A stretch of 64,000 nucleotides of DNA, taken from the NCBI RefSeq assembly GCF_022045235.1, contig NW_027266275.1, positions 57,846,001-57,910,000 on the forward strand. The letters run 5' to 3'. Origin of the DNA: Haliotis cracherodii. Its lineage: Eukaryota. The notes beneath the pieces were generated by a model. It had not been told where the DNA came from. It was given only the letters and a program-made list of their open reading frames with translations, and did no database searches. Each line of letters starts with the position of its first letter. The first letter of the stretch is position 1. Positions 3,327 through 63,429 of this stretch are shown here, piece after piece. The position numbers and the translations under genes are program-made.

Positions 3327-6300
3327 AGGATACTATGAAAAGGGCTCTGGGTGATGATCACAGCTGAACCCGTAGTGTATTGCTAGTTGTCCTAAGTTTC
3401 ACCCAACATGAACAGTCCTGGCAAGAAGAAAGAACTGTGAGAGTGAAATATTTTGATCCCTGTTTCCATTTGCTGTGTCGGATTGTGTTATGCTCCAACC
3501 TGAAAAAGAGAAATCAAAGAAAATTACAGGAAGCTTTTATCCTGATTTTCTTTAACACGTTGCCAATTGAGACCTGTCGCAGTTGTCTGAGTGCGTTGGT
3601 GTGAAGAGTTGTCTATTTCACCGTTCGAGTTGTTGATATCGGTGATGCGGTTATTATTATTTCATGTAAAGTTTTTGTGTGCCAGCTCTGATTTGCTTTA
3701 CACATAGTGATAAAGCTATCATAATGATGATCAGGTATTAAATCCCATTCGATCACTCATTCTAGCTTCAACTTTAATAACCAATGCATTTGCAGTTTTT
3801 GTTGAGTCAGCAAAATTGATAAAGTTCAAAGAGAATATTGGGACTTTATTATGAGCTTGTGAAAGGGATTCCAGTATGGAAACTTTTAGTGACTATATTT
3901 ACCTCATATGAGTGACATGCAGTATAGTTCTTGGCATGAAAGATGCACTCAAGAGGCTGTTGATATTCACCAACCAATTAATATTGTAGATAGCTGATTT
4001 CCCTAAACCTTCAGTTTATGTCCTTATGCTTTCATAAAGCGATTATGTTTTCAGTAAATAGAAATTCCACTTTTTTAACCATCAAGTTAAAACCTTCATC
4101 TGAAAGATCCCCAACTCAGGAACGTCTATGAAGACATAGTTTATCATGCTGGTAATTCACCCATTTACTTATCGTAATTTCCCTAAAGTATTGGAGTGGC
4201 TGGGGTTATTGACGTCGTGAAGAATGTGCATATTCCGCTGTCTATGAAAAAACACTCTGAGAATCTTTGAGTGCCAGGATGCCATGAAAGTTGATGTCAG
4301 AGAAGCAAGAATTGGACCATCTTTTCCAGAAAGAATTACCAGTGAGACTGTTTGTTATGGCCATGCACCTCTCCAGCCGTACACCAGTCACCTTTTTAGA
4401 GGGATCCTAGAATATTAAAGCTGGTCCCTCATGTCTCCTTAACTAGTACTCCTCAACTTCATTAAAAAAAGACTGAGTGCCATACTTCTTTAAAGAGAGA
4501 CTAACTGCTGTTGAATTGAGAAAAATATGGTTATAATTTGAAGGTGTGCAAAGACACTGATATTTATGGAATGTTACTTGGTGTCTAATCTGACTAGTGT
4601 GTATTAATGAGATCAGTTTATGGTTTTTTTTATAGAATATCTTATCTTTTTCAATGAGATGAAAGATGTGGGTTCCTTTGGTATATTTTATTTTCAGATG
4701 TAGAATGGCAGGTGAGGGCCTGGTTAGTGTGTTCACTTTCCAGTCATAAGTCTTGGGTTTGAATCCCTATATGATCCCTCAAATACATGTTTATTCAACT
4801 GATCATGCTTACAAATTCAAAGAGAACGTCTGATTGTCATGTTTCAGTTGCAATGATGATTTGTGGCTTCACTCTTGTTGCCAGCTCGTCCATATACTCA
4901 TCCACCCACTCACCCAACCGCCCGCTCACCCACCCACCCGCTCTTTTGTTATGATGTTTGACTATAGAATGTAGGTACAATATATGTAGCCCAATCCTAC
5001 ATGTTAATTAGTTATTATCTCAAACAACTACCCATCCACCCACCCATCCACCATCTCACTCAGGGGTTTTACCTTGCACAACTCACAAAATACACAGCAA
5101 GTATGGGTAGATCTTCAGCAACCCCTACTTGCCGTAAAAGGTGACTATGCTTGTTGTAAGGGGCGACTAACAGGATCAGGTGGTCAGGCTTGCTGACTTG
5201 GTGTTTGTATGGCATCGTATCCCAACTGCGTTGATCAATGCTCATTATAACAATCCCTGGATTGTCTCGTCCAGACTTGATTATTTACAGACCGCCGTCA
5301 TATAGCTGGAATATTGCCGAGTACGGCATTAAACAACAAACCAACCACAAAATACATTTCTCTTGGACTTTGTTGGAAAGGAAAGTGCTAAACCTCGCCA
5401 AGTAGTTGATGTCCTGATTCAGAATGATAAACTGCTTTATGCTACTGAGAGCTTAAAGACAGTACATGTGTCTGTAAAAAGATATGTAATAAGTGACACA
5501 TGGATTATTCTGTTTGGGACAGGGTTGTCTGGTCGTTTGTCTGATTTTCTTATATTGCTAAATTTGGGGGAGAAAAAACTAGCTGCAGAGAGAATTTATC
5601 CTTCTGCAAATGATTAATGTGCCTGGTTGTACGTGTCTAGGAACTTAAATCCTGTAAGTTTATGTGTTGAAATGAGAGGATATGTATTGGTTTGTAACCC
5701 TGCCGTCTCCTACATTGCCTCCCTGATTGCATATGTATGTAGTAACGCTGGAATGTTATTAACGACTGGACCAATGAAATATACAACTATTTTTTTCATG
5801 CTGTCAAGTGTCAAGAGGTTATCAGGAAATGAGTTAAACAGTGTCGGCGACCGTCATCTGGCACCTTTTTCTTTGTAGTAGTTATGTAAGGTAATGCTAC
5901 TTTCCCAATGGCTTACTGTAAATCTTCAGCAATAAGACATAGGTCATAGCTCGGTGTAAACACAAAATGCAGAGTGTGATGAAGTGCCAAGATGGTAGTA
6001 TTTTGTGATTTATGAGGATGAAATTGTTACAATGAACATGGAAAAGGACATGATTTAAGTCCTGCCTTGCCATCACCTTATCTTATCACAAGATGTGTCA
6101 GATAGATACTTTGTAAGAATAGGTGTTTGTGTAAACAGTTAGGTATGGAGGGGCCAAGGTGCTATAATTCACAATGCAGAGTTCAGTCCCTTTCATGTGC
6201 AAGGATCTACTGATTCACCCCCAATATGATTCCTGCACCTTATTCATATGGTTATGGCTTTCAACAAAGTGGTAAACATCTACATCCTGTGTCACGTTGA

Positions 6301-48200: not shown

Positions 48201-50644
48201 TTAGTGGGGGGGGGGGGTGGGGGGGTGGCAGAGGGAGGATCACCAAAAAGTATTTATCTCTAGGTGAGACTCGGTTATTAAAAAATAATGCACATATTTG
48301 GGGAGCCTCATGAATATTTGGACATTTCGTATTAAGATATTAATTCTTTTCAGGGAGGGCCTTGAAAAAAATGTACAAGGACATTGGGAGGGTCATCCAA
48401 AAATATGATAAGCATTAGGGGTTGATCATTATTTTCACTGCAGTAGTTCACCACCACCACCTCCTCCAAATCGTAACATGAAATATTCATATGCTTTGAA
48501 ACTTTGTTTTATAAAAAACACGAGTTGTTTGTGAACCTTTGATTCAATCAGTGTCATTCAGTCTGTTTCCTTAACCTGTCGGGGTGGTGGGGTAGCCTTG
48601 TGGTGAAAGCTTTCGGTCCTCATGCCGATGGGTACAGTCTGAAGCCCATTTCTGGTGTCCCCTGCTGTGATAGTGCTGGAATATTGCTGAAGCAGCATAA
48701 ACCATACTCACTCACTGTTACAAGATTGTGTCAGCAGGTCTCTTGAGCAGTTATTCACATAAAATCTGTCAGAATTTGACTGTTTGAAGGATCTGAAGAT
48801 CTAGGATAGTTTGTGTTAATCATCATCGTTGCTTTGGCTTGTGAAGTGATTGCTGCTGGTATGGACACTGGTACAGTTGTACTGATATTGCTGGTGTACA
48901 GAAGAGTGTAAAGTTGGGTGTATTCTCGAGGACAAAAATCTCAGAATGTGTAGACACTTTTAGCATAGCAAAATGCACAAATGATAATGTTGCTTATAAA
49001 GCTTCCCAGCTATGACGTATTTATTAAGTAGTTTTACTATTTATGTATACATGATATTGTTTATTTTATTAGTAAACCCAAATGATTCAGAATAGTGCAT
49101 ATCCATTCCTCATCCAATGAACTAGCGTGGAGTATATGCAAGGTTTCGTACGAACATTCTAACAAGTCGTGAAGACAAGTCTGTTAGACCACATAGTGGC
49201 TCACCAATATGTACAGATAATTATATGCTTTTATGTAATATTCTCCCTAAATCTTACCTCAAGTTATGTGCAGTGCTTTAACGTTCGGTTGTTATTGTTG
49301 GAACTACTTAGGATCAGTTCATGCTTTGAGATTTTAAAGTTACAAGTGCCTATTGGACAGATTTGTCTGCTGTTTTAAAGCTATGACATTTTTATGAGAG
49401 AATGGTTGCAGAATTTGCAAAAGGACAAATCATTAGAAGAGAGACGTGCTACATTAAGACTGCAAAATGTATTTGGAATGTTTCGTAAGGTAGTTGTTTT
49501 CTTGTCCCTATTCAAAGAAATTGAACTGAAAAAATATATTTCGAAGCAGTTAGAAGTTCCAGTGTTAAATCTCTGCCTGCCAACTCCCAGTAGTGTCCCT
49601 CTAGATAAGCACATCACTTTGTTATGTATCATATGCATGTTATTACAATGGTTAATGCATTGTTGTTGTCATTGAGTACCAGTTATTTAATAAAAGGAGG
49701 TATTTAAACCCTACAAGGTGTGCATGTAGATGTATCACTTCCGACATGTAATATATTGGTCAGAATAAACAGTTGACAGTGGCAGCTCAGTGTTCTGTTG
49801 TGACGATGAACATGAAAGGGAGACAACCGACATCCATTTAAGAGAAGTGTTTCATTACATGGCATGGTTTGTTTGATGCAGTGAGCGGGTGTGATGATGA
49901 AAGGGAGACAACTGAAGTCCATTTAAGAAAAGTTTTCAAGACATGGCTTGATGCCACTCCACTACATGACTATTGCTTGTAAATAATCCAGCCTGGGCCA
50001 AACTGGTGATTGATATTATTAGAAACGTCCCACGTCAAGAATCTTTAAGAAAACCCAAGGCACAGAGATCTTCCAAATGTGTGTGTGTAGCACACATGCA
50101 AATAGGGAATGTACATGGCATAAAATTGAAAGGAGAAAAAACAATTAACATGAAAATCAAAGTCTTAGTTTTGTATCCAAGTTTTCAAGCTGGAACCTGT
50201 GTAATTAGTATATCATCTGCCCTCAACTTCTAGCCGTTGTCAAGTCTGGGGAAATAAAATCATCTTGGTTGGTTGGTTTTACACAGTACTCAGCAACATT
50301 CAGCTATATGATGGCGGTCTGTAAATAATCAAGTCTGGACCAGACAATCCAGTGACTGACATGTGCATCGATCCATGCAATTGCCATCAATGACATGCAT
50401 CAACCAAGTCAGCGAGCCTGACCACCCGCTCCCATTAGTTGCATTTTACGGCAAAATCATCTTGGACACCAGTGTCCACCATTGTCACAACGACTTGTCT
50501 CCCATCGATCAATGCAAGGTGCAAAAACACAACAAATCAGTTCGAATGTGCGTATGGTTCTATATAGATCCTTCCTGAATATTCACAATTGTTCACCATA
50601 CTGAATAACAAGTACATGTACACTAGAAATGGTAATTGAGTTAC

Positions 50645-51000
50645 ATACTGAACTGCAAAAAAAATGTCACTACATGAAAGTTTCCCACTTTGTGGAGGTA
50701 TCTTGTTTTCGACTTTAGTCTGTATCCAAATTTAATGCTAAGTTGATGCTACCCAAAGAGTGCCACAAATATGGATGTAATGGGTCGCCAAAATGCTGCT
50801 TAACTAACAGCCATGGTTTACCATACAAAGTCCCAAATGCTTTCAATGAAAATCAAAATTCATTTGAGTTTCTTTTTGACTTTTCTTATAAATGGGACCC
50901 CCAATACAAGGATCCAACATTTTTGTATTGATACAAGCGCCATGCCAAGACTTACGAGGAATCGGAGAAACCAGGCTTTTGGAAGACTGCATGCGTTTGA
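50645..51000 (+). pseudogene. Tc1-like transposon remnant
   Basis: ATG at 50942 encodes MPRLTRNRRNQAFGRLHA, resembling the N-terminus of Tc1-type transposases; frame closes soon after; TIR-like CTGAACTGCAAAAAAAATGTCAC upstream. Confidence 0.5.
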
Positions 51001-51290
51001 TGACCTGGCATCCTTACTGTAGATAGTTCTCACGTGGACATTAAAAGCATTTCGTGCAGTCTGGCCAGAATGCAGTCCTAAAGCCAGGGTTTCTGATTCT
51101 GGGGTGAGCATTATCTGTAGACTTTGCACACACATTAACACACATCTGTATCAAACAGGAGACGAGCCAACATTCAGAAATACTCAAGTATGCAGTCTAG
51201 GAGCCTATCAGTGACACTGCACATTCACTAAAGGACGGTCTCGACAACCTGTCATGGCTACATTTTCTTTTCTCACAGGCAAGCAAATAG

Positions 51291-51554
51291 TGAGTGAGTT
51301 GTGTTTAACGCAGCTTTTAACAGTATTCCAGTTATATCACGGTGTGTCAGCTTAATGTGGGAGAAAGCCCAAAGTGATGCAGGTCTCAGACGTTTACCAC
51401 TTCGGTGAAACCCACGAGCACAGGTATGGTGCTGACAAACCTAGAAAGATAATTGGGGCGAACCGCGATTCATAGGTTTCTGGCGTGCCCAAGGGACACA
51501 ACTCTGCACAGCGAATCGAGGCACCTTAGACGACTGGGCCACTCGTGCCCCCCC
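51291..51554 (-). mobile_element. SINE family C
   Basis: TSD AGCAAATAG on both sides. Confidence 0.9.
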
Positions 51555-51825
51555 AGCAAATAGAACCACATATTGACCATAAATGACTGAATTATAGCAC
51601 CTTCTCATGTCTCAAGGATTGTTTTGTGAAAAACAAAGTATTCCAATGTAGAACTGTGAGGCACTTGATTAACTAGTCAATGTACATACATCACTTATAC
51701 CTATTCTATAATATTTCTAAATGCAAGATCGTCTCTCTCAATGTACAAATGTCTGTTAGGCCTGTGATCACTTAACTGTGATCCTTAAGCAATGAACCAA
51801 GAAAAGAGACATTTCCCAGACAGCT

Positions 51826-51831
51826 TTTATT
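51826..51831 (-). terminator. RPL18 polyadenylation signal AATAAA
   Basis: TTTATT on + strand, 22 nt past the stop codon; a short 3'UTR is typical of RP genes. Confidence 0.8.
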
Positions 51832-51853
51832 TGGGTGAAGTTTGTACACAGAT

Positions 51854-51949
<96 letters not shown>

Positions 51950-52187
51950 TCAGAGCAAGAAACATTGGCGTCATTCACTTAAAACAAATAAGCGACATAA
52001 CTAAAGCTGCAAGAAAACAAATGTAAACTGTAAAGACAGAAAGAATTATCTCCCTTCAATTACCTCACACCATTCATAATCAGAACCTTCAATCCAGAAT
52101 TTAACTTAATTAAATTCATTTATCATGATATTGCCAACATTGAAGAAATAAAATGTGCTTAGATATTTGACAATGTGTTGTACATAC

Positions 52188-52257
52188 GCAGTATTGCTGT
52201 GTGGCACACCAGGGGCGGTTCCGAAGTGTCTGTATGCTTCACGGGCCTTTCTGCGAC
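52188..52257 (-). CDS. RPL18: RPL18 exon 6
   Basis: tgtag|(G)RRKAREAYRHFGTAPGVPHSNT(A)|gtatgt, 70 nt. Confidence 0.98.
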
Positions 52258-52702
52258 CTACAACAAGTCATGTTCATATTAAACAATGACGTCTTTCTAA
52301 AGAAGTGTAAGGGTAAACATTGTTTTAAGCCACAGTCAGCAATATTCCAGCCTTTACATAACCAAGACTAGTCCAGTGGCTGACAAAAGCAATGATCCAC
52401 GCACTCAGCAACATTCCGGTTATAATATGACGGCCTGTAAATAATTGAGTCTGGACCAGACAATCAAGTAAATCAATATTGTGTGCAACAATCCATGCTG
52501 ATAGATATGAGGACTTGCTTTCAATGAAGTCGCAGAGTCTAACCACCCAAGGCAGGTCAACACCATGACCTATTCTATTACTAACCAGGAATCCCCAAAA
52601 GGTTTTGTCTGCTCTGAAGAGAAGCATTGAGCAATAGGGGCCTTTTCTGCCCTGGAATATTCAAGTGCCTATGAAGAGCCATCTAAAAGAGCAGAGTTGG
52701 AT

Positions 52703-52772
52703 GGCAATGTTCAGCTAAGATTTTGTCTTCAATGGGATCAGTCTCGAAAGATGAAAACATCATTACAATGCC
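52703..52772 (-). ncRNA. SNORD2: box C/D snoRNA, SNORD2/snR39B family (RPL18 intron 5, distal copy, guide variant)
   Basis: boxes intact; guide CATCTTTCGAGA (one substitution); perfect external stem GGATGGCA/TGCCATCC (52699-52706/52769-52776). Confidence 0.8.
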
Positions 52773-53878
52773 ATCCTATTTTTAAACAATTAAAATAAAT
52801 ATACCCGAGACCACAAAAATGGCTACTTGAAACCTTCACAGTCCTTGTCAAAAGTTGACAGTCCCAAATCTTATGGAATAAAAAGTGATGGTGCACCATT
52901 CCCACACTGGTGGGTTTCACCAAGTGGAGAACACCAAACACTTTGGGCTGTCCTCCAACCTTAAGCTAATACGCCGAAATATAACTGGGATACTGTTAAA
53001 AAACGGTGTTACGGCCATCTCAGTACCTCAAACCACATAACAAAATCCAGTCACCTCGTGACCAATCTCATGAAAGTCTGATCTTCGTTACTGCTACCGA
53101 TAAACAATCCATTACAGGTCACGCCAGAAGGAACCGACCAATGAAATGTCTAACAAGAAGTCGACAGTCGATCAGAAAGCAGTTTTCTCGAGCTAAAGGT
53201 GAGGTGAGGTGAAATGGGGTTTAATGTTGTGTCCAATATAATTGCACTTATTAAGCAACGTGCTTGTACATGTGTGTGTTTGTGTGGCTGCTTGTACTAG
53301 TCCAGACTGATGCCAATTTATAGTGCTAGTTCACCGAGATACCATGCTGCAGTTAAACATGAATACCCCACTCAGACACAGTATACCGACTCCGAAACGA
53401 CCAGTCCTTGTTTTAGCCCCTTATTGCCGAGCACCAGACAGGGTAACAACATTATCCAGCTAGATGGCACAAGTTTCAAAATGAAGTTATTTCGGGTTGG
53501 GTTTCAGTGAATGGTATTTTTACAAAAGCCAATCACCTGTGGATACATTTCATGGTCTTTGCAGTACACAAACAACTTCCTTGTTCATGAGATGGACAAT
53601 ATCGCGGTGCTCAAGACTACAGCGTATCTTTGGAAACATTATAGGTTTTTTAATTTTTGTACAAAATAGACATGGAGATATGTATTAGTAATTGGCATAA
53701 CAAAAATGACCATCCACAGGACGGGCTATCATGGACTGAGGGAGGGGGATTATTTGCAACTCTGATTTTAAGTTCTAACCCAAGGGGTTTGTCCGCTCTG
53801 AAGAGAAGAATAGGGGTCTATTCTGATCTGGAATCCCCAAATTCATATGAATAGCCATTTAAATGAGCAGAGTTGGAG

Positions 53879-53948
53879 GGCAATGTTCAGCTGAGATTTT
53901 GTCTTCAACGAGATCAGTCCCGAAAGATGAAAACATCATTACAAAGCC
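53879..53948 (-). ncRNA. SNORD2: box C/D snoRNA, SNORD2/snR39B family (RPL18 intron 5, proximal copy)
   Basis: GGCTTTGTA-ATGATGT-TTTCATCTTTCGGGA-CTGA-TCTCG-TTGAAGA-CAAAATCTCAG-CTGA-ACATTGCC; extended terminal stem. Confidence 0.9.
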
Positions 53949-53998
53949 ATCCTTATTTTAAACAATAAATTTGCTCATCCCAGCTCAATCTTTCTCAC

Positions 53999-54122
53999 CT
54001 TGCATCAGCACTGTGTTCTGTCCCTTAGGAGATCTCAGCGCCAGCTGGTCAAATGTGATGATCTCACCACCATTGCTGAGGATACGGCCACGTGCCCGCT
54101 CAGTGACACGCAGAGCGCATAT
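53999..54122 (-). CDS. RPL18: RPL18 exon 5
   Basis: tgtag|[42 protein letters not shown]|gtgaga, 124 nt. Confidence 0.98.
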
Positions 54123-54171
54123 CTACAAAGATAAAATGTGCATTTGGAACAGACGGTCAACCACATTATAG

Positions 54172-54441
54172 TTAGTTGGGTTAAACGCTGCTTTTTACAG
54201 TATTCCAGTTATATCATGGTGAGTCAGCTAATCACTGTTAATGTGGTAGGAAAGCCCGAAGTGATGCAGGTCTGACGTTTACCACTTCGGTGAAACCCAC
54301 TATGGTGCAGACAAACCTAGAAACAAATCCAAGGCGAACTGTGATTCGAACCGATAATCACAGGTTTATGGTGTGCCCAAGGGACGCAACTCTGCACAGC
54401 CAATCACAGCGCCTTAGGCGACTGGGCCACCCGTGCCCCCC
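54172..54441 (-). mobile_element. SINE family C
   Basis: TSD AACCA(C/A)ATTATAG; ~50 nt from the RPL18 exon 5 acceptor. Confidence 0.88.
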
Positions 54442-55712
54442 AACCAAATTATAGATAGCAGTGTTAGTTTGAATATTTATAGAAGTTAGTATATTAAAGA
54501 TCACATGAAATAGTTATGTACATTATCACAGTAAGGTAATGATGTCAATTGCCCCCCAAAATCAAAACAACCAACAGGCTTACTTATTTACAATTATTGT
54601 TGTTTAACACAGTACTCAGCAATATTCCAGCTTTATCACAGAAACCTGTAAAAACAGTCTGGGTCAAACATCCCAGTGATTGATAAAGTCACTGAGCCCA
54701 ACAAACCAACCATAAAGTCATCTGATTCCACAACCCTAGGTTGCTGTTGACAATTCAGACCTGGAATTCCCATGTGGTCTCACTACAATCAGGGATAGAA
54801 ATTAGCACTTGTCCATTAGCATGATTAGGACTATCCCTAGCTAGTTTCCCTAATGTTAAGGTTTGGTTTTTGTTGTTGTTTAACGCCGGACTCTGCAATA
54901 TTCCAGCTATATGACGGCGGTCTGTAAATGATCGAGTCAGGGCCAGACAATCCAGTGATTGACATCATGAGCATCGATCCACGCAATTTTGGATCGATGA
55001 CATGCATCAACCAAGTCAGCGAGCCTGACCACCCATTCCCGTTAGTCGCCTTTTACGACAAGCATAGTCACCTTTTAAGGCAAGTATGGGTTGCTGTAAA
55101 GTTAAGGATATCCTATGGCTGGTAAACTTTCAAACCTTTTGGGGGATGTTCATCTAGTATTTCGGCTAGTAAACTTCCTCCGTTAATTAATATGCCTGCT
55201 ACAATTGAAGCATTAACTGCACACAGCTTCAAAAACACTGTGCACTTTGTGATTGGGAAAGACTTTGGCCCCGCATTTACAAAATTTACCAGCCATTTTG
55301 GTATATATGGGCCATAAATTTCACAACATTGGCCATCAATAATTGCAATGGGCTATAAATTCAATATCATGCACAACTGCATCCACATTCAACAATATCA
55401 ACATCACCCTAACTATCACTGCTATCTTTGTTTGACGTTCAAAAACAAAAGTTTTCGGTCGGAAACAATCTGTTGTGTCTACATATTCCATGTATTAAGT
55501 TGACTGTACCAATAACTTCAATTCTTGTGAAACTGAGCAAAAGCACTTATTTCTGTCAGTGGATCAAGTTTCAGTTGATTTTTTTTTTTGACAGGAGGGA
55601 ATCAGTGGATATACGATCTTCCCATCGACAAACTGTACAAGTTATTGTCATCATCTTATTCTAAACAGCATGTGCCACCTGATCACTCGCATCTCTTCAG
55701 ATATACAAATTA

Positions 55713-56480
55713 CAGTCAAGTCTCGTTCATCCGACAATCGGCTTTATCCGACACTAATGATGGGAACTAAATAAATCAGTACTATTTTGACAAGTCTCGC
55801 ACTGACTCCAAAACACCTAATTTGTGATGAATTAAGGAAATCACTCATTAATCAGTCTTGTTAATCCGACACGGTGATCAGAGTACTCCTTGGTCATCTG
55901 CCCGCAAATACACAGCCTGTGTTTTGATGCGAGACGAGTCGGCTACAGAGATAAACTTGCTTAACAATAAACAATTCATGCTTTAACAAAGAAAACAGGA
56001 TTTATCCCATACTTAGATTACCTCAATCTCATTAAAATCAGATACAAGTTCTTGCTATCGCTGAGGACATCCCATTACAGGTCACGTCACAACCTTTCGC
56101 GAACTATGACCGACCAATGAAATGACTAACAGGACGTCAACATTAGCCACTTAGAAAGCAGCTTTCTTAAGCTTTGCGGTACCAATTTCAAACTTGCGAC
56201 TTCCATTCCAGACTATAATTTTTAAGTATTTTGAATAAGTCATACAGGTCATAAGAGTTTTGTGTTGAGCTTTAGAGGTTGCATGATTAGAAAATCTATT
56301 CCGCTAACAATGTAACATAACAATATGAATACTTCATTTGTTTTTTTAATAACACCTTTGTATCGTTATTTATCGTGTAGTTGTTGGATTTCCGATCATG
56401 AACAATTGATACTACTTAATTTCGCTTATCCGACATACTTGTCGGATGTCCAACCATGTCAGATAAACGAGATTTGACAG
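55713..56480. mobile_element. pogo/Tigger-like MITE (degenerate)
   Basis: imperfect TIRs CAGTCAAGTCTCGTTCATCCGACA / TGTCAGATAAACGAGATTTGACAG; repeated ATCCGACA motifs; TA on left only. Confidence 0.65.
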
Positions 56481-56521
56481 TTCATTTTTTAATATTTTAT
56501 TTTTTCTAATCACAAAGGGCA

Positions 56522-56585
56522 TGGTGTTCAGCAAAGATCTGACTTCATTAGAATCAGTCCCGAAAGATGAACCATCATTACACCA
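56522..56585 (-). ncRNA. SNORD2: box C/D snoRNA, SNORD2/snR39B family (RPL18 intron 4)
   Basis: TGGTGTA-ATGATGG-TTCATCTTTCGGGA-CTGA-TTCTA-ATGAAGT-CAGATCTTTG-CTGA-ACACCA. Confidence 0.93.
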
Positions 56586-56653
56586 GATTCTGCTGAAGAT
56601 CCTCTCGCACCACAACTTAATTGTTAAAGACCCAGGACTGAAGTGATTATTAC

Positions 56654-56752
56654 CTTCAGCTTGGGCACCTTGAGAAGACGGATGTCGTCTGTGACAGTTC
56701 CAACAATAACAGCAACCTTTGTGTCACGACCTGGCTTCCTCATCAGACGAAC
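56654..56752 (-). CDS. RPL18: RPL18 exon 4
   Basis: ccag|[33 protein letters not shown]|gtaata, 99 nt. Confidence 0.98.
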
Positions 56753-57200
56753 CTGGCCAGATAAACATCACCATTAACAACCACCTCAATTTGTAACAAT
56801 ACCGTCAAAGTCATCAACAGATCCAGTGGATCCTAATGGATGCATACATGGCTATACATGGTTCATACAAATCTTGAGCCAAGAAATTGTAGGCCATTTT
56901 CATGGCAGGGGTGGAGTAGCCTTGCGATTAAACCTGTTTGATTGGCATTCTAGTTTTGTTTGTTTATTTATTGTTTAACGCCGCACTCAGCTATATGACG
57001 GCAGTCTGTAAATAATCGAGTCCGGACCAGACAATCCAGTGATTGACATCATGAGCATCAATCCACCCAATTGGGATACGATGACGTGCATCAACCAAGT
57101 CAGTGAGTTTGACCACTCGGTCCCGTTAGACACTTCTTACGACAAGCACAGCTGCCTTTTGTGGCAAGCATGGGTTGCTGCAGACCTATTAGCATTCCAG

Positions 57201-57361
57201 TGAGTGAGTATGGTTTTACGCTGCTTTTTGCAATATTCCAGCAATATAACGGCGAGGGACACCAGAAACTGGCTTCACACATTGTACCCATGTAGGGAAT
57301 CGAACCCAGGTCTTCGGTGTGACGAGCTAACCCTTTAACCACTAGGCTACCCCATCGCCCC
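57201..57361 (-). mobile_element. SINE family A
   Basis: reverse complement of the 28285 copy; flanked by ATT(A/G)GCATTC repeats. Confidence 0.9.
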
Positions 57362-57465
57362 GATTGGCATTCAAGAAGTTGGTGAGTAAAAATGAAAACA
57401 TACAACTTTATGGATAACAGCTTCCGGTTTACTGCGTTAAGCGACATTTTGATGTACATTCTTAC

Positions 57466-57850
57466 GGGGGTCGGAACGATACATTGATGCACTGGTACAT
57501 AGTGAGTTTTCATGTGACGATACAACACACAGTGCATTTTTCTCTGTATTGATACAAGATGATATTGCTGAAATAAATTACTTACTACTTGTTAATATAC
57601 CCCTGGCGTTTTTATCAGTCAGATATAGGAAAATGATTAGCGTTTCAGGTTCACTACACACACAAAAAATCAACAACAAAAAATCGCCATTACAAACATG
57701 TCTACAGCTAGCTCTTCCTTTTGAACCTGCTCTGGAATATTTATTGTCAAGATGTTTCCATGCGATTTGACGTAATTATGTGTATCGCCATACATATCGC
57801 ATTGTGACCTATGTATCATATGGGTATCATGCTATATCGTTTCACCCCTA
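57466..57850. mobile_element. hAT-like MITE
   Basis: 8-bp TSD ATTCTTAC (57458-65, 57851-58); right end TATCGTTTCACCCCTA, left end degenerate GGGGGTCGGAACGATA. Confidence 0.72.
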
Positions 57851-57979
57851 ATTCTTACATCGTTATGAAGCTGAAGTGACTACAAGCAAGTAATGAGAAG
57901 TATATATTTTACACCTGACACAATTATGTTGTGATAAGCAGCAGATTAATCAACAAAAACAGGTAATGGATAACAGGTA

Positions 57980-59104
57980 CCGTATTTTCTTGAGTATAGT
58001 GTGCACCCCCCTCTAGCAGATTCAGTGTTTTGAAAAAAAAATGATTGAATGGCATGCGCAGAAAAAAAATACACCGTAGATCTACCCCTTCAGTGAATTC
58101 CGGTAAACGAAAGGGTCATGAGAAACTTGGTCAGTACAAATTCGAAATTTGAGATAAAAAAAAATATATAAAAAAATCTTTAAAAAAAATCACCAGACAT
58201 GTTTATTTAACGTTTAAATTGTATTCTTTGTTCGGCTAGGCATTGTTTTACATCCAGGGATTAAGATTACCTTGTGTATTTTCTCATAAACTAAGCCGGA
58301 AACAGCAATCAGCTGTACACTCGTTTTCTTGGAATCTACTGGTGACACCCCCAATGATATAACTTTACAGGATTTTAATGCAAGGATCGGCTTAAATTGT
58401 ATCTGAAACTAATTTATTGATTAGGAATAATATATCCCAATATCTTGTTAATTTAGTTGCAGCTTTCACTAAACATGTTTTAAACAATAATACCCCTAAG
58501 CAAAGCAGCTGATCGCTATTGCCGGTTATTATTTTTCACATGGAACCAGTCTGACCAGTCACCGTCAAGGCTCCCGCGCACGTGAACTACGTGTTGACAT
58601 AGAATCGTCAAACTATAACAAATATGACTTTTAACGAGTCAAAGTATGGCATTTATGATATATGTATCCATTCTCTGTCAACTAATGTTTGTTTCAAGGC
58701 GTCACTAGTGGTAATCTGACCGTGGTTGCTGTTAATAACGGTGAGTTGTGCCATCTTCAGATCGCTTCACACACGATTTCGCCGAAACTATTTAAAACAA
58801 TATTAAAAGGAATTTTGAATACAATTAATGAAATAAGTTACATACATAAGTCCGGAAATACAAAGAACACTTTTTATAGCCAGACAGTGTAATTACATGA
58901 TTAATTTGCGTACATCAGTATGGATTTGTTGACATGGTATTTCCGATATTTCCGATGTTACGTGTTCACTGTAATATCTTTCGATGGGGGGGGGGGGGGG
59001 GGGGGGGAAGGAAAAACCTCATATTTTGTGTATAATGCGCACCCCCTTCTACACAGCTTTGTTTTTTGGAAAAAAAGTGTGCACTTATACTCATGAAAAT
59101 ACGG
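57980..59104. mobile_element. non-autonomous Tc2/pogo-like DNA transposon (~1.1 kb)
   Basis: TIRs CCGTATTTTC(T/A)TGAGTATA, TA TSDs, repeated subterminal GTATARTGYGCACCCCC. Confidence 0.85.
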
Positions 59105-59424
59105 TAGAACAGATAAATGGATTGGACAATTGGACAGATGCACAGCATGAATAACAAATAAGACACGGGTAATGAACATGATGAAGCCAGTTATACAGTA
59201 AAGATTAAAAAGTTCAACAAGCTGATTGGATATAAAAAAAATGGATTGCTAGATTAGATCTTCATCGGCAGACGGGACAGCATTATGACATATGCATCCA
59301 TTCTCTGATAAGTAAGGTTCATTTCAAGGTGTCAGATTTGTTGACATGTTATTTCCTCTTATCACAAGTTACTATAAAGATAACTTCTTTGAGTGGCATT
59401 TAGAAGTTGGAATGGTAACTAAGA

Positions 59425-59480
59425 TTTGCTTGATAACGGTGTTGGAATCTACACCGAAACGTCGCCCAATTGTAATAAAG
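59425..59480 (+). other. Penelope-type minimal hammerhead ribozyme-like motif followed by AATAAA
   Basis: GC-TTGATAA-C-GGTGT(TGGAATCT)ACACC-GAAA-CG-TC-GC, AATAAA at 59474-79. Confidence 0.6.
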
Positions 59481-59561
59481 AAGTTGCTCATCCATAACAA
59501 TTTTGTCTTAGTTACTACAAAGATTCTGCCAATTCCTCAAAAAGGATAGTTATAGATATGT

Positions 59562-59623
59562 GGTGTTCAGCAAAAACGTGACTTCATTAGAATCAGTCCC
59601 GAAAGATGAAACATCATAACACC
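59562..59623 (-). ncRNA. SNORD2: box C/D snoRNA, SNORD2/snR39B family (RPL18 intron 3)
   Basis: GGTGTT-ATGATGT-TTCATCTTTCGGGA-CTGA-TTCTA-ATGAAGT-CACGTTTTTG-CTGA-ACACC; terminal stem; guide complementary to 28S CCCGAAAGAUG. Confidence 0.92.
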
Positions 59624-59694
59624 TGTTTCCTTACAAGCATCAAAACAGATTTCCAAACCTTATTTCATTTTTTTAAGTTACACGCACTACTTAC

Positions 59695-59802
59695 TATTTT
59701 AGCCAGTGAGATGGGAGGTTTGTTGGTGTTGCTCATGAACAGCCTCCTGAGGATCACCTTGTTAAACTTGGCATTGGTTCTCCTAGCCAAGAAGCGGTAT
59801 AG
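59695..59802 (-). CDS. RPL18: RPL18 exon 3
   Basis: ttcag|[36 protein letters not shown]|gtaagt, 108 nt. Confidence 0.98.
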
Positions 59803-60104
59803 CTGAAAACAGGCAAAAGAAACAGCTGTGCTGAACAAGAGCATTATTTCAAGAAAAATTGAACTGTTAAATCTGTCAAAACATTGATCAAATGGATTTC
59901 CATAAACAAGAATTTATTAATCAACACTTGGGGTATGATAGACAGGTAAAGGCATCATGGATTTTCTCAAGTGAAGGTTTTATTTGTGAACAATACCTAA
60001 TTCTCCATTATTATAGATCCCATCATCAACTCTGTGGTATAATCATGCACAAAACTACCTAAAGGCATCGCATTTCGAGTGAATGTTGATAAGACCTGTG
60101 AAGA

Positions 60105-60356
60105 CCTGTGAAGATCCGGGTTAGAATCGGTCTTCATCAACCCATGCTTGCCGTAAAAGTGAGTATGCTTGTCGTAAAAGGCGACTAACAGGATTGGGTG
60201 GTCAGGCCCGCCAAGTTGGTTGTAAATGTCATCGTTTCCCAATTACATGGATCAATGTTCATGATGTCAATCACTGGATTGTCTGGTCCAGACTCGATTA
60301 TTTACAGACCGTCTTAAAACTGGAATATTGCTGAGTGTGGTGTTAAATAACAAACG
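60105..60356 (+). mobile_element. SINE-like family B
   Basis: full-length copy starting CCTGTGAAGATCCGGG, in RPL18 intron 2. Confidence 0.88.
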
Positions 60357-61721
60357 AATGTTGGTAATGGTATGGGATGTTGGGTGAGAAAGTCAAGGAA
60401 ATATTTCCAAAAGAAACAGTCTTCCTCCAAGGCATTTTATTTTTTCTTCTTTAAGCTTGGATATTGATGACAATGCAATAAACACATACCTGCAACACAC
60501 CCTTCTCATCCATGCACACACATTTGGACTCTTCATTAAGAAAAGATGTTTGAAAACTATCCTTTAACTTGTTTAACCATGTTAACAGTAACATTAATAG
60601 TACTACTTGTTGCTAGATGCATGTCGTGGGGTTTCTAGGTAAGAATAGTCACTGCTTAATGAGGAATGGGTGGTGAGATTCGTTATGGTAGATTCTGTGT
60701 TTTTTTTGTTCATGTTTTCAGTCACTGTTAACGTGGTCCAGAATTTCCACAGGCCAATGTGATATAGCTGGAGTATTGTCAACTGCTAGCTGTTGGTGTT
60801 TATACTTGAAATGAAATGGGGCTTGGGGTTTAACACATTCAAGATTGCACTTATATAACGACATGCATATGTGTCTGCTTGTACTAGTCCAGACTAGCAA
60901 GTATTACACTGTAATAGTGCTAGCTCACCATGTTGCAGTTTAACACATACCTCACCAGCTTAACACAGATACCTCACTCAGTCTACAGACTTCAAGCTGA
61001 CCAGTCTTTGTCTTATCCCCTTATTGCCAAGCGCAAGGCAGGGCAACAACATGTAACATCTCTTGATGTCTTTTGGAAAGCAGCTTGGGATCGAAACGAG
61101 GTGTCATTCTCCAGGCAGAAGCTCTATCCACCAGACCACAAGATTCATGTTGCAGGCTTAGCTATGATCATGACGACAGCATTGTTTATATTACGTTCAT
61201 AGATTTACAAGCATTGCTTGTTGTATAACACCAAACACAGCAATCTTCCAGCCATATGACGTTGGTCTCTAAATAAACAAGTGTGGACCAGACAATCCAG
61301 TGATTGATATATCATGAGGTTCCTGAAGACCTATTCTAACCCGAATCTTCACAGGTTTCACAAGCATTGAAGCAACGAGTCCGAGAAAGCTAACGAACTG
61401 TAAACAGACTTTTCGGTAAGTCGAGGCTAATAGCATACTAGTCAACACGGAATAGAAGACAGCATTGCTAATTTGCAAGTAAATAAGGCATCCTTGTAAT
61501 CTTGAAGATTAATATAACACGTGTATGAGCATTGTAAAATGTGTAAAAGTTATACGAAGTCATAATTACAACACGATGTCATTCTTGGATCATGAAATAG
61601 ATCGAAACTTCTAAGTGCTTCACATGTTTCCGTAGTGTCTGGAGAGTCATAAGGTTACACTAACAGTTAAATATAAGTTTCCAAAGAATAACATGAATGA
61701 GAAAAATGACACAAAACTTAC

Positions 61722-61808
61722 TTTCACCAAAAGCCTCAGATAGATATCCTGGCTCCTGGGCTGGGTCCTTCTGACCTTTCGGTCATACTTATGTGTAATG
61801 TCTATACC
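61722..61808 (-). CDS. RPL18: 60S ribosomal protein L18 (eL18) exon 2
   Basis: tttag|[29 protein letters not shown]|gtaagt, 87 nt. Confidence 0.98.
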
Positions 61809-61937
61809 CTAAAAAGAAAAGAAAACGATAGTTTAATCATTGTACTTTCAGAAAATATTTATTACTGGAAGTTGAAACAACTGATTGGCACGATACAAGG
61901 ACGATGATTAGACATGTATTGATGTCTACATGCTCAC

Positions 61938-61940
61938 CAT
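61938..61940 (-). CDS. RPL18: RPL18 exon 1 (ATG only)
   Basis: minus strand cttcctttcaacaagaccccaaagATG|gtgagc; ATG-only first coding exon as in vertebrate RPL18. Confidence 0.93.
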
Positions 61941-61955
61941 CTTTGGGGTCTTGTT

Positions 61956-61964
61956 GAAAGGAAG
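61956..61964 (-). promoter_or_regulatory. TCT initiator / 5'TOP pyrimidine tract of RPL18
   Basis: minus strand CTTCCTTTC 15 nt before the ATG; characteristic of ribosomal-protein genes. Confidence 0.85.
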
Positions 61965-63429
61965 TTGCAAGGGATTTTGGGAAATATTCAAGGGAGGTTA
62001 CTCTCAGCTAAACATTCATGAGCTATTGGTTCGAAGCGCAGTTTTACCATTTGTTCCCACTTTTATTATAGTTATATATTATACTAAATCATAACTGATA
62101 TGTATTTTTAAATATCGAAAAATCAATCTGAGATATCCTATGATTTATTTTCTATTTAGAAAAATCAAAATTGTGATAGATCTAGCTCTAGATCTATCTA
62201 AAAATGAAATCTTATTGTCGAATTTCCGAATTTGTTATATCAATTTTTCAATAAATCAATAATTGACATAATGAAACGGCAAACAAACCGGCGCCTTATT
62301 CTAGGAGTTATCACTCATGAGAAAACATGCATTTTCAATGTTTACCAGTCTCGTAATCCGGGAGTTTTTTTCTACTGCGACATTCAACAAATCAATTGTG
62401 CGTTGCGATGCTTTTTGCATTAATGTCTACACCAAGAATGAGCTCCACACAATGTACCCATTTGGGAATCGAACCCGGGTCTTTGGCATGACTGCGAACG
62501 GTTTATCCACAGGGCTACCCAACCGCTCCGATGTAACTAATCCCACATAAAATCCTGCGTTTTATGTAGTAATATTCAAGAGTTTTTTTTTTAAAATAAT
62601 GTGTTTTACTTGTGCTGAAATTATATCGCAAAATCGGATTTTTCGTCTCAAGTCATTGGCAGTTATGGGTTATAGAGAAAACAACCCCTTGCAAAAAAAT
62701 GTAAAGTAATGGGAATTGTGTGTAATAAAGAAATAAGTACACGATTAACATGACAACTCTAATTATGTGTCCACATACATATATATATTTATGCAAGACA
62801 GTGTTAATGAGAGTGAACTGTAACAACGGGAGGTGGGGAGCTATTGGTATGGAGCATTCTGTTTCCACCATCGACTGTCCAGTGTATAATATTCCCATTC
62901 TGTTACATCTACCACGGTAGAATGAAAACTAATACACAGGATAATCGAGTGCTGCTCTTGTAAATTTCATTTTTAAGCCATGATGCAACTCGAGAAACAC
63001 GAGAAAACAGGTTAAGGTTGGAGTTACAGAGTTGAACGGTCGGAAAGTCGGGAACATATATTTATTTTCTGGCCTAATTATTTATAAAAACATGTCATAA
63101 ATCCATTATTACCCACAAGTAATAACTTTATAAGCTGGTCAAGTGGGCGACACACGGGAGTATGTTTTTGATGTCTATAGCTGGTAAGAGGAAATGCTTG
63201 ACAAGTCGTGGTCCGTCGGCATATATCAACATACAGGACAGTTCATGTTGTCTTAACTTTTTGGAAGACATTTGTGACTGTAATGGCTGACACCAGTCTT
63301 ATCCTATCCTATCCTATCCACATTTCTAACAAAGATGAGTGGCCTTTGCTTTATTAACCCACTTCCGTGGTTCTATATTATTTACAGCTGAATTATTATA
63401 CGTTACAATTAAAATTCTAAGATAATTTA

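What the first reader, a model, noticed from the sequence alone, without database searches (positions are those of the whole stretch)
52699..59623. Four-copy SNORD2/snR39B snoRNA cluster hosted in RPL18 introns
Seen: four ~62-70-nt minus-strand elements (introns 3, 4 and two in intron 5), each with box C (AUGAUGG/U), guide UCAUCUUUCGGGA, D' CUGA, C', D CUGA and a terminal stem. Known: the guide pairs with the conserved LSU rRNA segment CCCGAAAGAUG, and the D'+5 rule selects the G of CCCG (yeast Gm805 via snR39B; human SNORD2, whose host is EIF4A2). Inference: this lineage hosts the family in RPL18 and amplified it into two subfamilies (intron 3/4 type and intron 5 type) that differ in the D-box-side region while keeping the D' guide. 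It is invisible to the ORF track and easy to miss in annotation.
Basis: partly seen in the sequence, partly recalled or inferred. Interest (0 to 1): 0.75.

Follow-up and report, generated by a model that had tools for sequence, protein, structure and literature searches.

The report
Four SNORD2-type snoRNAs in RPL18 introns
Four copies of a well-known small guide RNA, which directs methylation of one conserved G in the large ribosomal RNA, sit in three introns of a ribosomal-protein gene (RPL18); this is a real but ordinary intronic snoRNA cluster, in a different host gene from the one vertebrates use.

Summary
Rfam's SNORD2/snR39B model (RF01299) hits four minus-strand elements of 64-66 nt: c1 59561-59624 (39.9 bits), c2 56522-56585 (47.5), c3 53881-53946 (33.7, below the 37-bit cut-off) and c4 52705-52770 (37.3).

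They lie in introns 3, 4 and 5 (two copies) of a seven-exon RPL18/eL18 gene. Pfam matched all six exon peptides tested, and all three splice joints appear in RNA-like public contigs.

In c1-c3 the D' guide forms 11 Watson-Crick pairs plus one G-U with the genome's own 28S. It places G1000, the G of CCCG, at the fifth pair. The D-box-side regions have no rRNA target.

Genome-wide motif and model searches found no copy outside this gene.

c1 and c2 are alike only within the snoRNA. c3 and c4 lie in a local tandem duplicate of about 215 bp and are better conserved than their flanks.

Mature RNA and methylation were not shown. This is a new member of a known kind. Earlier scan notes record several similar multi-copy intronic snoRNA arrays elsewhere in this genome.

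The parts
59561..59624 (-). c1: box C/D snoRNA, SNORD2 type A, in RPL18 intron 3. It starts at intron nt 71 and its 3' end lies 2808 nt before the 3' splice site.
   Evidence: RF01299 39.9 bits, over the cut-off. The guide gives 11 WC + 1 GU pairs on 28S G1000. 5-bp terminal stem. Distances.
56522..56585 (-). c2: box C/D snoRNA, SNORD2 type A, in intron 4. It starts at intron nt 69 and ends 2399 nt before the 3' splice site.
   Evidence: RF01299 47.5 bits. Same guide and target as c1. Perfect 6-bp terminal stem UGGUGU/ACACCA. Distances.
53881..53946 (-). c3: box C/D snoRNA, SNORD2 type B, first copy in intron 5. It starts at intron nt 53.
   Evidence: RF01299 33.7 bits, below the 37-bit cut-off. 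The guide is intact. An interrupted terminal stem is extended by an external stem (z -2.07). A 198-nt contig of RNA-like run X1 covers 53740-53937 with 0 differences.
52705..52770 (-). c4: box C/D snoRNA, SNORD2 type B, second copy in intron 5, 447 nt before exon 6. A G>A change sits at the third guide position upstream of D'.
   Evidence: RF01299 37.3 bits. The guide reads UCAUCUUUCGAGA, so the contiguous duplex on G1000 is lost. 11-bp external stem with one mismatch (z -2.66).
53763..53968 (-). Tandem-duplicate block holding c3: about 22 nt upstream and about 118 nt downstream of the snoRNA.
   Evidence: Aligns with the c4 block. Identity is 61/66 in the snoRNA against 108/140 in the flanks, Fisher one-sided p 0.0048.
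52579..52792 (-). Tandem-duplicate block holding c4.
   Evidence: Its 135-nt downstream flank is found at only 2 places in the genome, here and beside c3.
61938..61964 (-). RPL18 exon 1. ATG at 61940-61938, and a pyrimidine tract CTTCCTTTC at 61964-61956. The 5' end was not determined.
   Evidence: Read from the sequence: ATG|GTGAGC. Not confirmed by reads.
61722..61808 (-). RPL18 exon 2
   Evidence: PF17135 profile positions 1-30, E 3e-6. AG/GT borders read.
59695..59802 (-). RPL18 exon 3
   Evidence: PF17135 positions 30-63, E 5.6e-15. Its 3' end is joined to exon 4 in a contig of X1 (loose end at 56752).
56654..56752 (-). RPL18 exon 4
   Evidence: PF17135 positions 68-100. Joint 54122/56654, skipping 2531 nt with GT..AG ends, in X1 and X2.
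53999..54122 (-). RPL18 exon 5
   Evidence: PF17135 positions 100-140, E 1.4e-18. The loose end at 53997 in X1 reads the start of exon 6.
52188..52257 (-). RPL18 exon 6
   Evidence: PF17135 positions 141-163. Borders read.
51854..51929 (-). RPL18 exon 7, coding part including the stop codon
   Evidence: PF17135 positions 165-187 of 188. Borders and TAA read.

Best explanation
These are four paralogous intron-encoded box C/D snoRNAs of the SNORD2/snR39B family. They are carried on the RPL18 pre-mRNA.

Inferred mechanism, from the general pathway for intronic snoRNAs. The host gene is transcribed and introns 3, 4 and 5 are spliced out. The box C/D core proteins (Snu13, Nop56, Nop58, fibrillarin) assemble on the C/D and C'/D' motifs, and exonucleases trim the debranched intron to a snoRNA of about 64-66 nt. 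The D' guide UCAUCUUUCGGG then pairs with 28S CCCGAAAGAUGG, and fibrillarin 2'-O-methylates the G opposite the fifth guide nucleotide (G1000 of this genome's LSU). That site is homologous to yeast Gm803/805 and human Gm1509.

The region before box D is not a second rRNA guide.

c1-c3 are predicted to be active. c4 has an A-C mismatch two pairs from the target nucleotide and is probably weakened or inactive.

History of the copies: c1/c2 and the ancestor of c3/c4 are old duplicates that spread between introns. c3/c4 arose by a later local tandem duplication of about 215 bp.

Shown here: the sequence features, the family match, the target complementarity, the host identity, host splicing, and the absence of other copies. 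Inferred: the mature RNA, snoRNP assembly and methylation.
For: - Family: RF01299 hits on all four copies, 3 of 4 over the curated cut-off.
- Conservation: boxes, guide and stem are invariant or nearly so across the copies, while the D-side region varies.
- Target: the motif is present once in 4 of 4 LSU copies.
- D' guide: best rRNA duplex is 11 WC + 1 GU at 28S G1000, reached by only 1, 5 and 8 of 300 shuffles for c1, c2 and c3. The D-side regions were reached by 60-277 of 300 shuffles.
- c1 against c2: similarity is confined to 69 nt around the snoRNA, with unalignable flanks. This implies selection on the RNA itself.
- c3 against c4: 61/66 identical in the snoRNA against 108/140 in the duplicated flanks, p 0.0048.
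- Host: RPL18 by Pfam on 6 of 6 exon peptides. It is highly represented and spliced at introns 3, 4 and 5 in RNA-like contigs.
- No other locus: 0 of 8 and 0 of 10 motif sites elsewhere are SNORD2-like. The model built from the copies finds only these four.
- Literature: the family and its target are ancient (PMC3511168, passages).
Against: - No mature 64-66-nt RNA was seen. The runs found are contig sets with RNA only guessed, and contigs cannot show RNA ends or levels. Bin 56450-56649, which holds c2, has zero depth in X1 and X2.
- c3 is below Rfam's cut-off, and its terminal stem has two U-U mismatches.
- c4's guide is altered.
- Whole-molecule fold energies of c1 and c2 are no better than shuffles, z 0.93 and 0.02. 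This is usual for C/D snoRNAs but gives no support.
- All copies lie 0.4-2.8 kb from the 3' splice site. That is far from the roughly 70-80 nt position reported as optimal in vertebrates (recalled, not checked here).
- The whole-genome RNA searches scored only the best candidates, 61 of 273,116 and 150 of about 657,936. Rfam's model missed c4 in that mode.
Confidence: 0.85

Rival explanations
1. Only one or two copies, most likely c2 and c1, are working genes. c4, and perhaps c3, are decaying duplicates that are no longer assembled into snoRNPs or no longer guide methylation.
For: - c4's G>A change removes the contiguous duplex on G1000. Its best rRNA match is then at chance level, reached by 71 of 300 shuffles.
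- c3 scores 33.7 bits, below the 37-bit cut-off, with two mismatches in the 6-bp terminal stem.
Against: - c3 and c4 are more alike within the snoRNA (61/66) than in the co-duplicated flanks (108/140), p 0.0048. Both were therefore constrained for most of the time since duplication.
- All four boxes are intact in both copies.
- Both have extended external stems with fold z-scores of -2.07 and -2.66.
- c4 still offers 10 contiguous pairs from guide position 4 onward (read).
Confidence: 0.35
2. Besides or instead of guiding rRNA methylation, the copies act in cis on RPL18 splicing by pairing with neighbouring intron sequence, as shown for human SNORD2 in EIF4A2.
For: - Human SNORD2 pairs with its downstream intron and masks the branch point (PMC10324135, abstract and section 7).
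- In c2, the 12 nt upstream plus its first 4 nt can pair with the D-side region and box D in the minimum-energy fold.
Against: - That c2 fold is no more stable than shuffles, z 0.02.
- The complementary 5' flank is not shared with c1; flanks are unalignable.
- The copies are 447-2808 nt from the 3' splice sites, so the human geometry does not apply.
- No alternative exon was seen. Only the constitutive joints appear among the 15 joints listed; 4722 more were not shown.
Confidence: 0.07
3. The elements are chance motif matches, or pieces of a dispersed repeat, and are not RNA genes.
For: The introns are full of high-copy repeats; depth reaches 1e5 to 1e7 in many bins.
Against: - Four independent Rfam hits to one family.
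- The exact guide+D' 17-mer occurs nowhere else in 1.18 Gb.
- The flank of c4 occurs at only 2 places, both in this intron.
- The bins holding the snoRNAs are low-depth, unique sequence.
Confidence: 0.01

Closest known systems
Vertebrate SNORD2 (snR39B), in intron 3 of EIF4A2
   Same: - Same Rfam family, RF01299.
- Same box order.
- Same D' guide core, CAUCUUUCGGGACUGA, in the family consensus.
- Same conserved LSU site: human Gm1509, chicken 28S-G1457 (PMC3511168 and PMC2653536, passages).
- No second rRNA guide found here.
   Different: - Host gene: RPL18 here, and no copy elsewhere in this genome. In vertebrates the EIF4A2 host is annotated in 84 of 109 species (PMC13736004, passages).
- Copy number: four copies of two subtypes here. 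The chicken table lists one copy (GGgCD34) (PMC2653536, passages).
- Position: 53-71 nt after the 5' splice site and far from the branch point here. The human copy pairs with the branch-point region (PMC10324135, section 7).
Yeast snR39B (25S Gm803/805) and Arabidopsis snoR39BY (Gm812)
   Same: The homologous target G in the conserved CCCGAAAGAUGG segment. The family is traced to the last eukaryotic common ancestor (PMC3511168, table passage).
   Different: Their genomic contexts were not checked here. The paper files the plant RNA near RF00055 rather than RF01299.
Multi-intron snoRNA paralogues in ribosomal-protein genes, such as chicken U18 in RPL4 introns 2, 5 and 6 and U38 in RPS8 introns 4 and 5
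   Same: Several copies of one guide family spread over successive introns of a ribosomal-protein gene, one per intron as a rule (PMC2653536, table passage).
   Different: A different family and a different host. Here one intron also holds a tandem pair.
Other multi-copy intronic snoRNA arrays noted in this genome by the scan (CCT5 x12, RPL13A x10, ATIC x5)
   Same: The same genome, with the same pattern of amplified box C/D guides in the introns of one host (unchecked AI notes).
   Different: Other families, targets and hosts. I did not re-examine them.
snR39 / SNORD32-SNORD51 / nematode ceN109
   Same: Their guides overlap the same 28S segment. This explains the weak ceN109 hit on c2 (22.5 bits, cut-off 52) and the snR39 hit on a metagenome contig.
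   Different: In the ceN109 consensus the D' box follows CAUCUUUCGG directly. The register is therefore shifted by 2 nt, which points to the A two positions downstream rather than the G (read from the alignment).

Membership tests
SNORD2 / snR39B (Rfam RF01299) | Covariance-model score at or above the curated gathering score (37 bits) | tested here: met
   Met by 3 of 4 copies: c2 47.5, c1 39.9, c4 37.3 bits. c3 scores 33.7 and does not meet it.
SNORD2 / snR39B (Rfam RF01299) | Box C (RUGAUGA-like) near the 5' end and box D (CUGA) near the 3' end, bracketed by a terminal stem | tested here: met
   AUGAUGU or AUGAUGG, and CUGA, in 4 of 4 copies. The stem is 5-6 bp in c1 and c2. In c3 and c4 it is interrupted and extended by flanking pairs.
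SNORD2 / snR39B (Rfam RF01299) | Internal D' (CUGA) and C' boxes | tested here: met
   D' CUGA is invariant. C' is UGAAGU (c1, c2) or UGAAGA (c3, c4), matching the family consensus aUGaAGA.
SNORD2 / snR39B (Rfam RF01299) | A D' guide complementary to LSU CCCGAAAGAUG, with the G of CCCG opposite the fifth nucleotide upstream of D' | tested here: met
   c1-c3 give 11 WC + 1 GU on the genome's own 28S at G1000, reached by 1-8 of 300 shuffles. c4 does not meet it because of an A-C mismatch at guide position 3.
SNORD2 / snR39B (Rfam RF01299) | Accumulates as a stable snoRNA of about 60-70 nt | tested here: inconclusive
   Only contig sets were available. A low-depth contig in each of X1 and X2 covers most of c3 plus downstream intron. 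c2's bin is empty in X1 and X2. Contigs cannot show RNA ends.
SNORD2 / snR39B (Rfam RF01299) | 2'-O-methylation present at the cognate 28S G and dependent on the snoRNA | not testable with these tools
   Needs RiboMeth-seq or primer extension, plus knock-down.
Ribosomal protein eL18 / RPL18 (Pfam PF17135), the host gene | Exon peptides match successive parts of the profile across its full length | tested here: met
   6 of 6 exon peptides match profile positions 1-30, 30-63, 68-100, 100-140, 141-163 and 165-187 of 188. 4 of 6 exceed the 28-bit cut-off singly; exons 2 and 6 score 27.2 and 25.8. The exons were searched one by one, and the joined protein was not searched.
Ribosomal protein eL18 / RPL18 (Pfam PF17135), the host gene | Transcribed and spliced as modelled | tested here: met
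   The intron 4 joint with GT..AG ends is in X1 and X2. The intron 3 and intron 5 joints show as loose ends in X1 that read the neighbouring exons. Introns 1, 2 and 6 lie outside the stretch laid.

The most novel reading that the evidence does not exclude
SNORD2 is described in vertebrates as unusually faithful to one host, EIF4A2, where it regulates host splicing in cis. In this mollusc it has instead moved entirely into a ribosomal-protein gene, multiplied to four copies of two subtypes, and sits right after the 5' splice site.

If RPL18 proves to be the host across molluscs or lophotrochozoans, two things would follow. The vertebrate SNORD2-EIF4A2 coupling would be a derived state rather than an ancestral one. 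The 5'-proximal position, kilobases from the branch point, would point to a processing route that does not depend on branch-point proximity.
Probability: 0.3. Interest if true: 0.4.

Novelty: new member of a known kind. Interest (0 to 1): 0.27.

Why it matters
- It supplies an annotation that gene and ORF tracks miss, with a precise, testable prediction: Gm at 28S G1000.
- It adds an invertebrate data point on host-gene mobility for a snoRNA family that recent work presents as tightly tied to EIF4A2 in vertebrates.
- It offers a natural series of paralogues for studying what keeps duplicated guides alive: two old copies, one recent pair, and one copy with a guide mismatch.

It does not change what is known about how box C/D snoRNAs work.

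Tried and rejected
1. A second, D-box guide. The regions before box D differ between copies. Their best rRNA duplexes are at chance level, reached by 60, 179, 269 and 277 of 300 shuffles. c1's 12-pair match at 28S A3038 (8 WC + 4 GU) is not shared by c2. Rejected.

2. Further copies elsewhere, for example in an EIF4A gene.
- 8 one-mismatch sites and 10 'box C + guide' sites outside the window gave 0 SNORD2 hits.
- One site, G000 C56:6280011, has box C and the 13-nt guide but no D' box. It has no Rfam hit, and I saw no DEAD-box-like open frame by eye in 20 kb around it. I treated it as chance or a decayed relic.
- I did not locate the EIF4A gene itself.

3. Rfam's model over the whole genome scored only 61 of 273,116 candidates and missed c4. 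I therefore built model R1 from the four copies. It found only those four, which match it by construction.

4. Further snoRNAs in the other RPL18 introns. A crude C..D-plus-stem scan of 51800-62000 gave 3 candidates: c1, c2 and one at 55654-55571 with no rRNA target. It missed c3 and c4 because their stems are interrupted, so it is insensitive.

5. Mobile-element origin of c3/c4. The flank occurs only at these two places. Rejected.

6. Comparison with other organisms.
- One scan of metagenome contigs with a 17-nt guide+D' motif returned 119 stretches, of which 80 became loci.
- 0 of 80 matched R1 at E 0.01.
- 0 of 80 held an RPL18 exon by tblastn with the six exon peptides searched separately.
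- 6 of 80 had TGATG within 22 nt upstream.
- 3 of those 6 gave sub-threshold hits to SNORD2, SNORD96 or snR39.
- Their organisms are unknown, so this says nothing about molluscs.
- L085 and L106, with 4 and 3 motif matches, were not examined.

7. Literature on the host.
- SNORD2 + RPL18: 9 papers, judged from the listing only; by title all are human or mouse expression studies.
- snoRNA + abalone: 33 papers, 10 listed.
- snoRNA + Lophotrochozoa + host gene: 6 papers.
- In PMC11067994 (passages), snoRNA reads were only filtered out.
- I found nothing on SNORD2 hosts in molluscs. Supplementary tables were closed; those of PMC3511168 and of the Drosophila maps could bear on orthology.

8. Drosophila Me28S-G1083. 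I recalled it as a possible counterpart. A passage of bioRxiv 10.1101/2023.05.25.542231 places Me28S-G1083b in Nop60B, guiding G1108 and A1117. bioRxiv 10.64898/2026.05.21.726978 (one passage) only reports its renaming. I could not show that it targets the same site, so I make no claim of orthology.

9. Expression. No listed run is on record as RNA. The laid contigs confirm host splicing but not the small RNAs.

Full report
OBSERVATION

A scan of window 50000-62000 against all Rfam families gave five matches at E up to 1. Four were to SNORD2 (RF01299), all on the minus strand:
- c2, 56522-56585: 47.5 bits, E 3.3e-7.
- c1, 59561-59624: 39.9 bits.
- c4, 52705-52770: 37.3 bits.
- c3, 53881-53946: 33.7 bits.

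The fifth was a weak ceN109 match lying on c2 (22.5 bits against a cut-off of 52). At Rfam's curated thresholds the whole 64-kb window holds exactly three matches, c2, c1 and c4. c3 falls 3.3 bits short.

The sequences are 64, 64, 66 and 66 nt long. Aligned, these features are invariant:
- AUGAUG of box C;
- UUCAUCUUUCG.GACUGAU, which is the guide plus D', with one variable position;
- UGAAG of C';
- GCUGAACA, which is box D and the start of the 3' stem half.

c4 reads UCAUCUUUCGAGA, not ...GGGA.

HOST GENE

Stop-free stretches on the minus strand and the sequence itself give a seven-exon gene:
- exon 1 ends with ATG at 61940-61938;
- exon 2 is 61808-61722;
- exon 3 is 59802-59695;
- exon 4 is 56752-56654;
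- exon 5 is 54122-53999;
- exon 6 is 52257-52188;
- exon 7 runs from 51929 to the TAA at 51856-51854.

I searched the exon peptides one by one; the joined protein was not built or searched. All six hit Pfam Ribosomal_L18 (PF17135), at successive profile positions from 1 to 187 of 188.

Introns 3, 4 and 5 are 2942, 2531 and 1741 nt long and all begin GT and end AG.

Public contig sets laid on 52650-58649 confirm the splicing:
- A joint 54122/56654 skipping 2531 nt, with ends CT..AC on the plus strand, is present in X1 and X2.
- In X1, a loose end at 56752 reads the end of exon 3.
- In X1, a loose end at 53997 reads the start of exon 6.

I checked both loose ends.

In X1 and X6 the exon bins are hundreds of times deeper than unique intron bins. 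In X20 they are not. X1 and X6 therefore behave as RNA and X20 as DNA.

TARGET

The genome's LSU rRNA was found at four places. All four carry GGGACCCGAAAGATGGTGAAC once, at the same position.

Counting from the Rfam-delimited 5' end of the 3719-nt LSU, the G of CCCG is G1000. The guide of c1-c3 forms 12 contiguous pairs with it, 11 Watson-Crick and one G-U. The pairing starts at the second nucleotide upstream of D', and G1000 lies opposite the fifth.

This was the best duplex against 18S, 5.8S and 28S. Only 1, 5 and 8 of 300 mononucleotide shuffles of the c1, c2 and c3 guides reached it.

For c4 the G>A change puts an A-C mismatch at guide position 3. No contiguous duplex on G1000 remains under my criterion, and its best alternative is at chance level, reached by 71 of 300 shuffles.

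The 14 nt before box D gave only chance-level matches, reached by 60, 179, 269 and 277 of 300 shuffles. They also differ between c1 and c2 at 3 of 10 positions. They are not a second rRNA guide.

ARE THERE OTHER COPIES?

- The exact 17-nt guide+D' string occurs three times in the 1.18-Gb assembly, all here. With one mismatch there are nine more places: c4 and eight others. The reversed control gave two.
- None of the eight gave a SNORD2 match at E up to 1.
- A 'TGATG, 2-9 nt, CATCTTTCGG' pattern found 13 places: c1-c3 and ten others, against one for the control. None of the ten gave a snoRNA match.
- A covariance model built from the four copies found only those four at E up to 10. They match it by construction.

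The RNA searches of the whole genome score only the best first-look candidates, 61 of 273,116 and 150 of about 657,936. The Rfam-model search missed c4. 'No other copy' therefore rests mainly on the pattern scans.

HISTORY OF THE COPIES

c1 and c2 are 89.9% identical over 69 nt around the snoRNA and unalignable beyond it, within 400-nt flanks. The two types match each other only within the snoRNA, over 31-61 nt at 80-94%. These are old duplicates in which only the RNA has been kept.

c3 and c4 share a block from about 22 nt upstream to about 120 nt downstream of the snoRNA. The downstream flank occurs nowhere else in the genome. This is a local tandem duplication, with 1110 nt between the two snoRNAs, and not a mobile element.

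Within that block the snoRNA is 61/66 identical and the flanks 108/140 (Fisher one-sided p 0.0048). Both intron-5 copies were therefore under constraint for most of the time since duplication, whatever c4's present state.

Type A (c1, c2) and type B (c3, c4) differ in:
- one extra U after box C;
- the D'-C' spacer;
- C' (UGAAGU against UGAAGA);
- the D-side region;
- the stem (GGUGU/ACACC against AUUGU/ACAUU).

ANATOMY RELEVANT TO PROCESSING

c1, c2 and c3 begin at intron nucleotides 71, 69 and 53, just after the 5' splice site. They end 2808 nt (c1) and 2399 nt (c2) before the 3' splice site. c3 ends 1110 nt before c4, and c4 ends 447 nt before exon 6.

Most of the rest of these introns is high-copy repeat. 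Summed contig depth reaches 1e5 to 1e7 in bins such as 53250-53449, 54050-54449, 54850-55249 and 56850-57449, against 3-70 in the unique bins that hold the snoRNAs. My inference is that repeat insertions downstream of the snoRNAs inflated the introns.

Predicted folds with 12-nt flanks:
- c1 shows the terminal stem.
- c3 and c4 show extended external stems: 11 bp with one mismatch in c4 (z -2.66), and a weaker one in c3 (z -2.07).
- c2's minimum-energy fold instead pairs its 5' flank with the D-side region, and it is no better than shuffles (z 0.02).

EXPRESSION OF THE SMALL RNAs

This was not settled. No run is on record as RNA, and only contigs were laid.
- One 198-nt contig in X1 (53740-53937, 0 differences) covers most of c3 plus downstream intron. 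One contig in X2 (53783-53941, 1 difference) does the same.
- c2's bin is empty in X1 and X2 and has depth 17 in X6.
- X20 contigs reach into c2, c3 and c4, with 4-10% differences over their length.

Contigs cannot show RNA ends or levels.

COMPARISON WITH WHAT IS KNOWN

- The family and its target are ancient: Arabidopsis snoR39BY Gm812, human Gm1509 and yeast snR39B Gm803, in the table of PMC3511168 (passages read).
- In chicken the orthologue sits in EIF4A2 intron 3, as in human (PMC2653536, passages).
- A 2026 survey reports SNORD2 with the same annotated host, EIF4A2, in 84 of 109 vertebrates and calls the association remarkably stable (PMC13736004, passages).
- Human SNORD2 pairs with the downstream intron and masks the branch point, regulating an alternative exon (PMC10324135, abstract and section 7).

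Here the host, the copy number and the intron position are all different. The human cis geometry cannot apply at 0.4-2.8 kb from the 3' splice site.

Several copies of one guide spread across the introns of a ribosomal-protein gene is itself a familiar pattern. Chicken has U18 in RPL4 introns 2, 5 and 6, and U38 in RPS8 introns 4 and 5 (PMC2653536).

Earlier, unchecked notes of this scan call the genome an abalone. They list several similar arrays in it: CCT5 with twelve copies, RPL13A with ten and ATIC with five. I did not verify the organism or those arrays.

My searches found no paper on SNORD2 hosts in molluscs.

OUTSIDE THIS GENOME

No collection of animal genomes was available. A metagenome scan with the guide+D' motif returned 119 stretches, 80 of them as loci.
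- None held an RPL18 exon.
- None matched the abalone model.
- Six looked like box C/D snoRNAs.
- Three of those gave sub-threshold hits to SNORD2, SNORD96 or snR39.

Their organisms are unknown, so the reach of the RPL18 association remains untested.

VERDICT

This is a real cluster of four SNORD2/snR39B-family box C/D snoRNA genes, in introns 3, 4 and 5 of RPL18.
- Three copies are predicted to guide 2'-O-methylation of 28S G1000.
- The fourth copy carries a guide mismatch.
- There is no copy elsewhere in the genome.

It is a new member of a well-known kind. Its mild interest lies in the host switch relative to vertebrates and in the graded series of paralogues.

Noticed in passing
window 56586-56597 with 56527-56545 (minus strand, around c2): The 12 nt upstream of c2 plus its first 4 nt can form a helix of about 16 bp, with one bulge, with c2's D-side region and box D. 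This would compete with the C/D kink-turn. The fold is no more stable than shuffles (z 0.02), and c1 does not share the flank.
   Followed up: partly
G000 C56:6280011-6280031, minus strand (locus L028, about position 1500): UGAUGA followed by the full 13-nt SNORD2 guide, but with GCGU where D' should be. There is no Rfam hit, and I saw no recognisable coding frame by eye in 20 kb around it. It is either chance or a decayed relic copy.
   Followed up: partly
window 53250-53449, 54050-54649, 54850-55249, 56850-57449 (RPL18 introns 4 and 5): Very high-copy repeats fill most of the introns; summed contig depth reaches 1e5 to 1e7 in all four runs. By eye, several look like tRNA-derived SINE heads, for example near 57300-57365 and 54360-54430 on the minus strand. 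The snoRNAs sit in the unique remainder.
   Followed up: partly
window 58986-59007 (minus strand, intron 3): A run of 22 C residues inside intron 3.
   Followed up: no
loci L056 (about 4876-4929 +), L077 (about 2228 +), L089 (5169-5245 -): Metagenome contigs of unknown eukaryotes carry box C/D snoRNA-like units with the same guide+D' string but a longer spacer between box C and the guide. Their Rfam hits are sub-threshold: SNORD2 at 31 bits and SNORD96 at 32 bits. No RPL18 exon lies nearby.
   Followed up: partly
loci L085 (2471-3073) and L106 (841-1462): Two metagenome contigs hold 4 and 3 exact copies of the 17-nt guide+D' motif, spaced about 180-410 nt apart, with no TGATG within 22 nt upstream. 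They may be tandem snoRNA clusters of another lineage or an unrelated repeat.
   Followed up: no
window 56522-56583 (minus strand): The weak ceN109 hit on c2 arises because the nematode snoRNA's guide covers the same 28S segment in a register shifted by 2 nt. That register points to the A two positions downstream (the snR39/U32/U51 site) and not to the SNORD2 site.
   Followed up: partly
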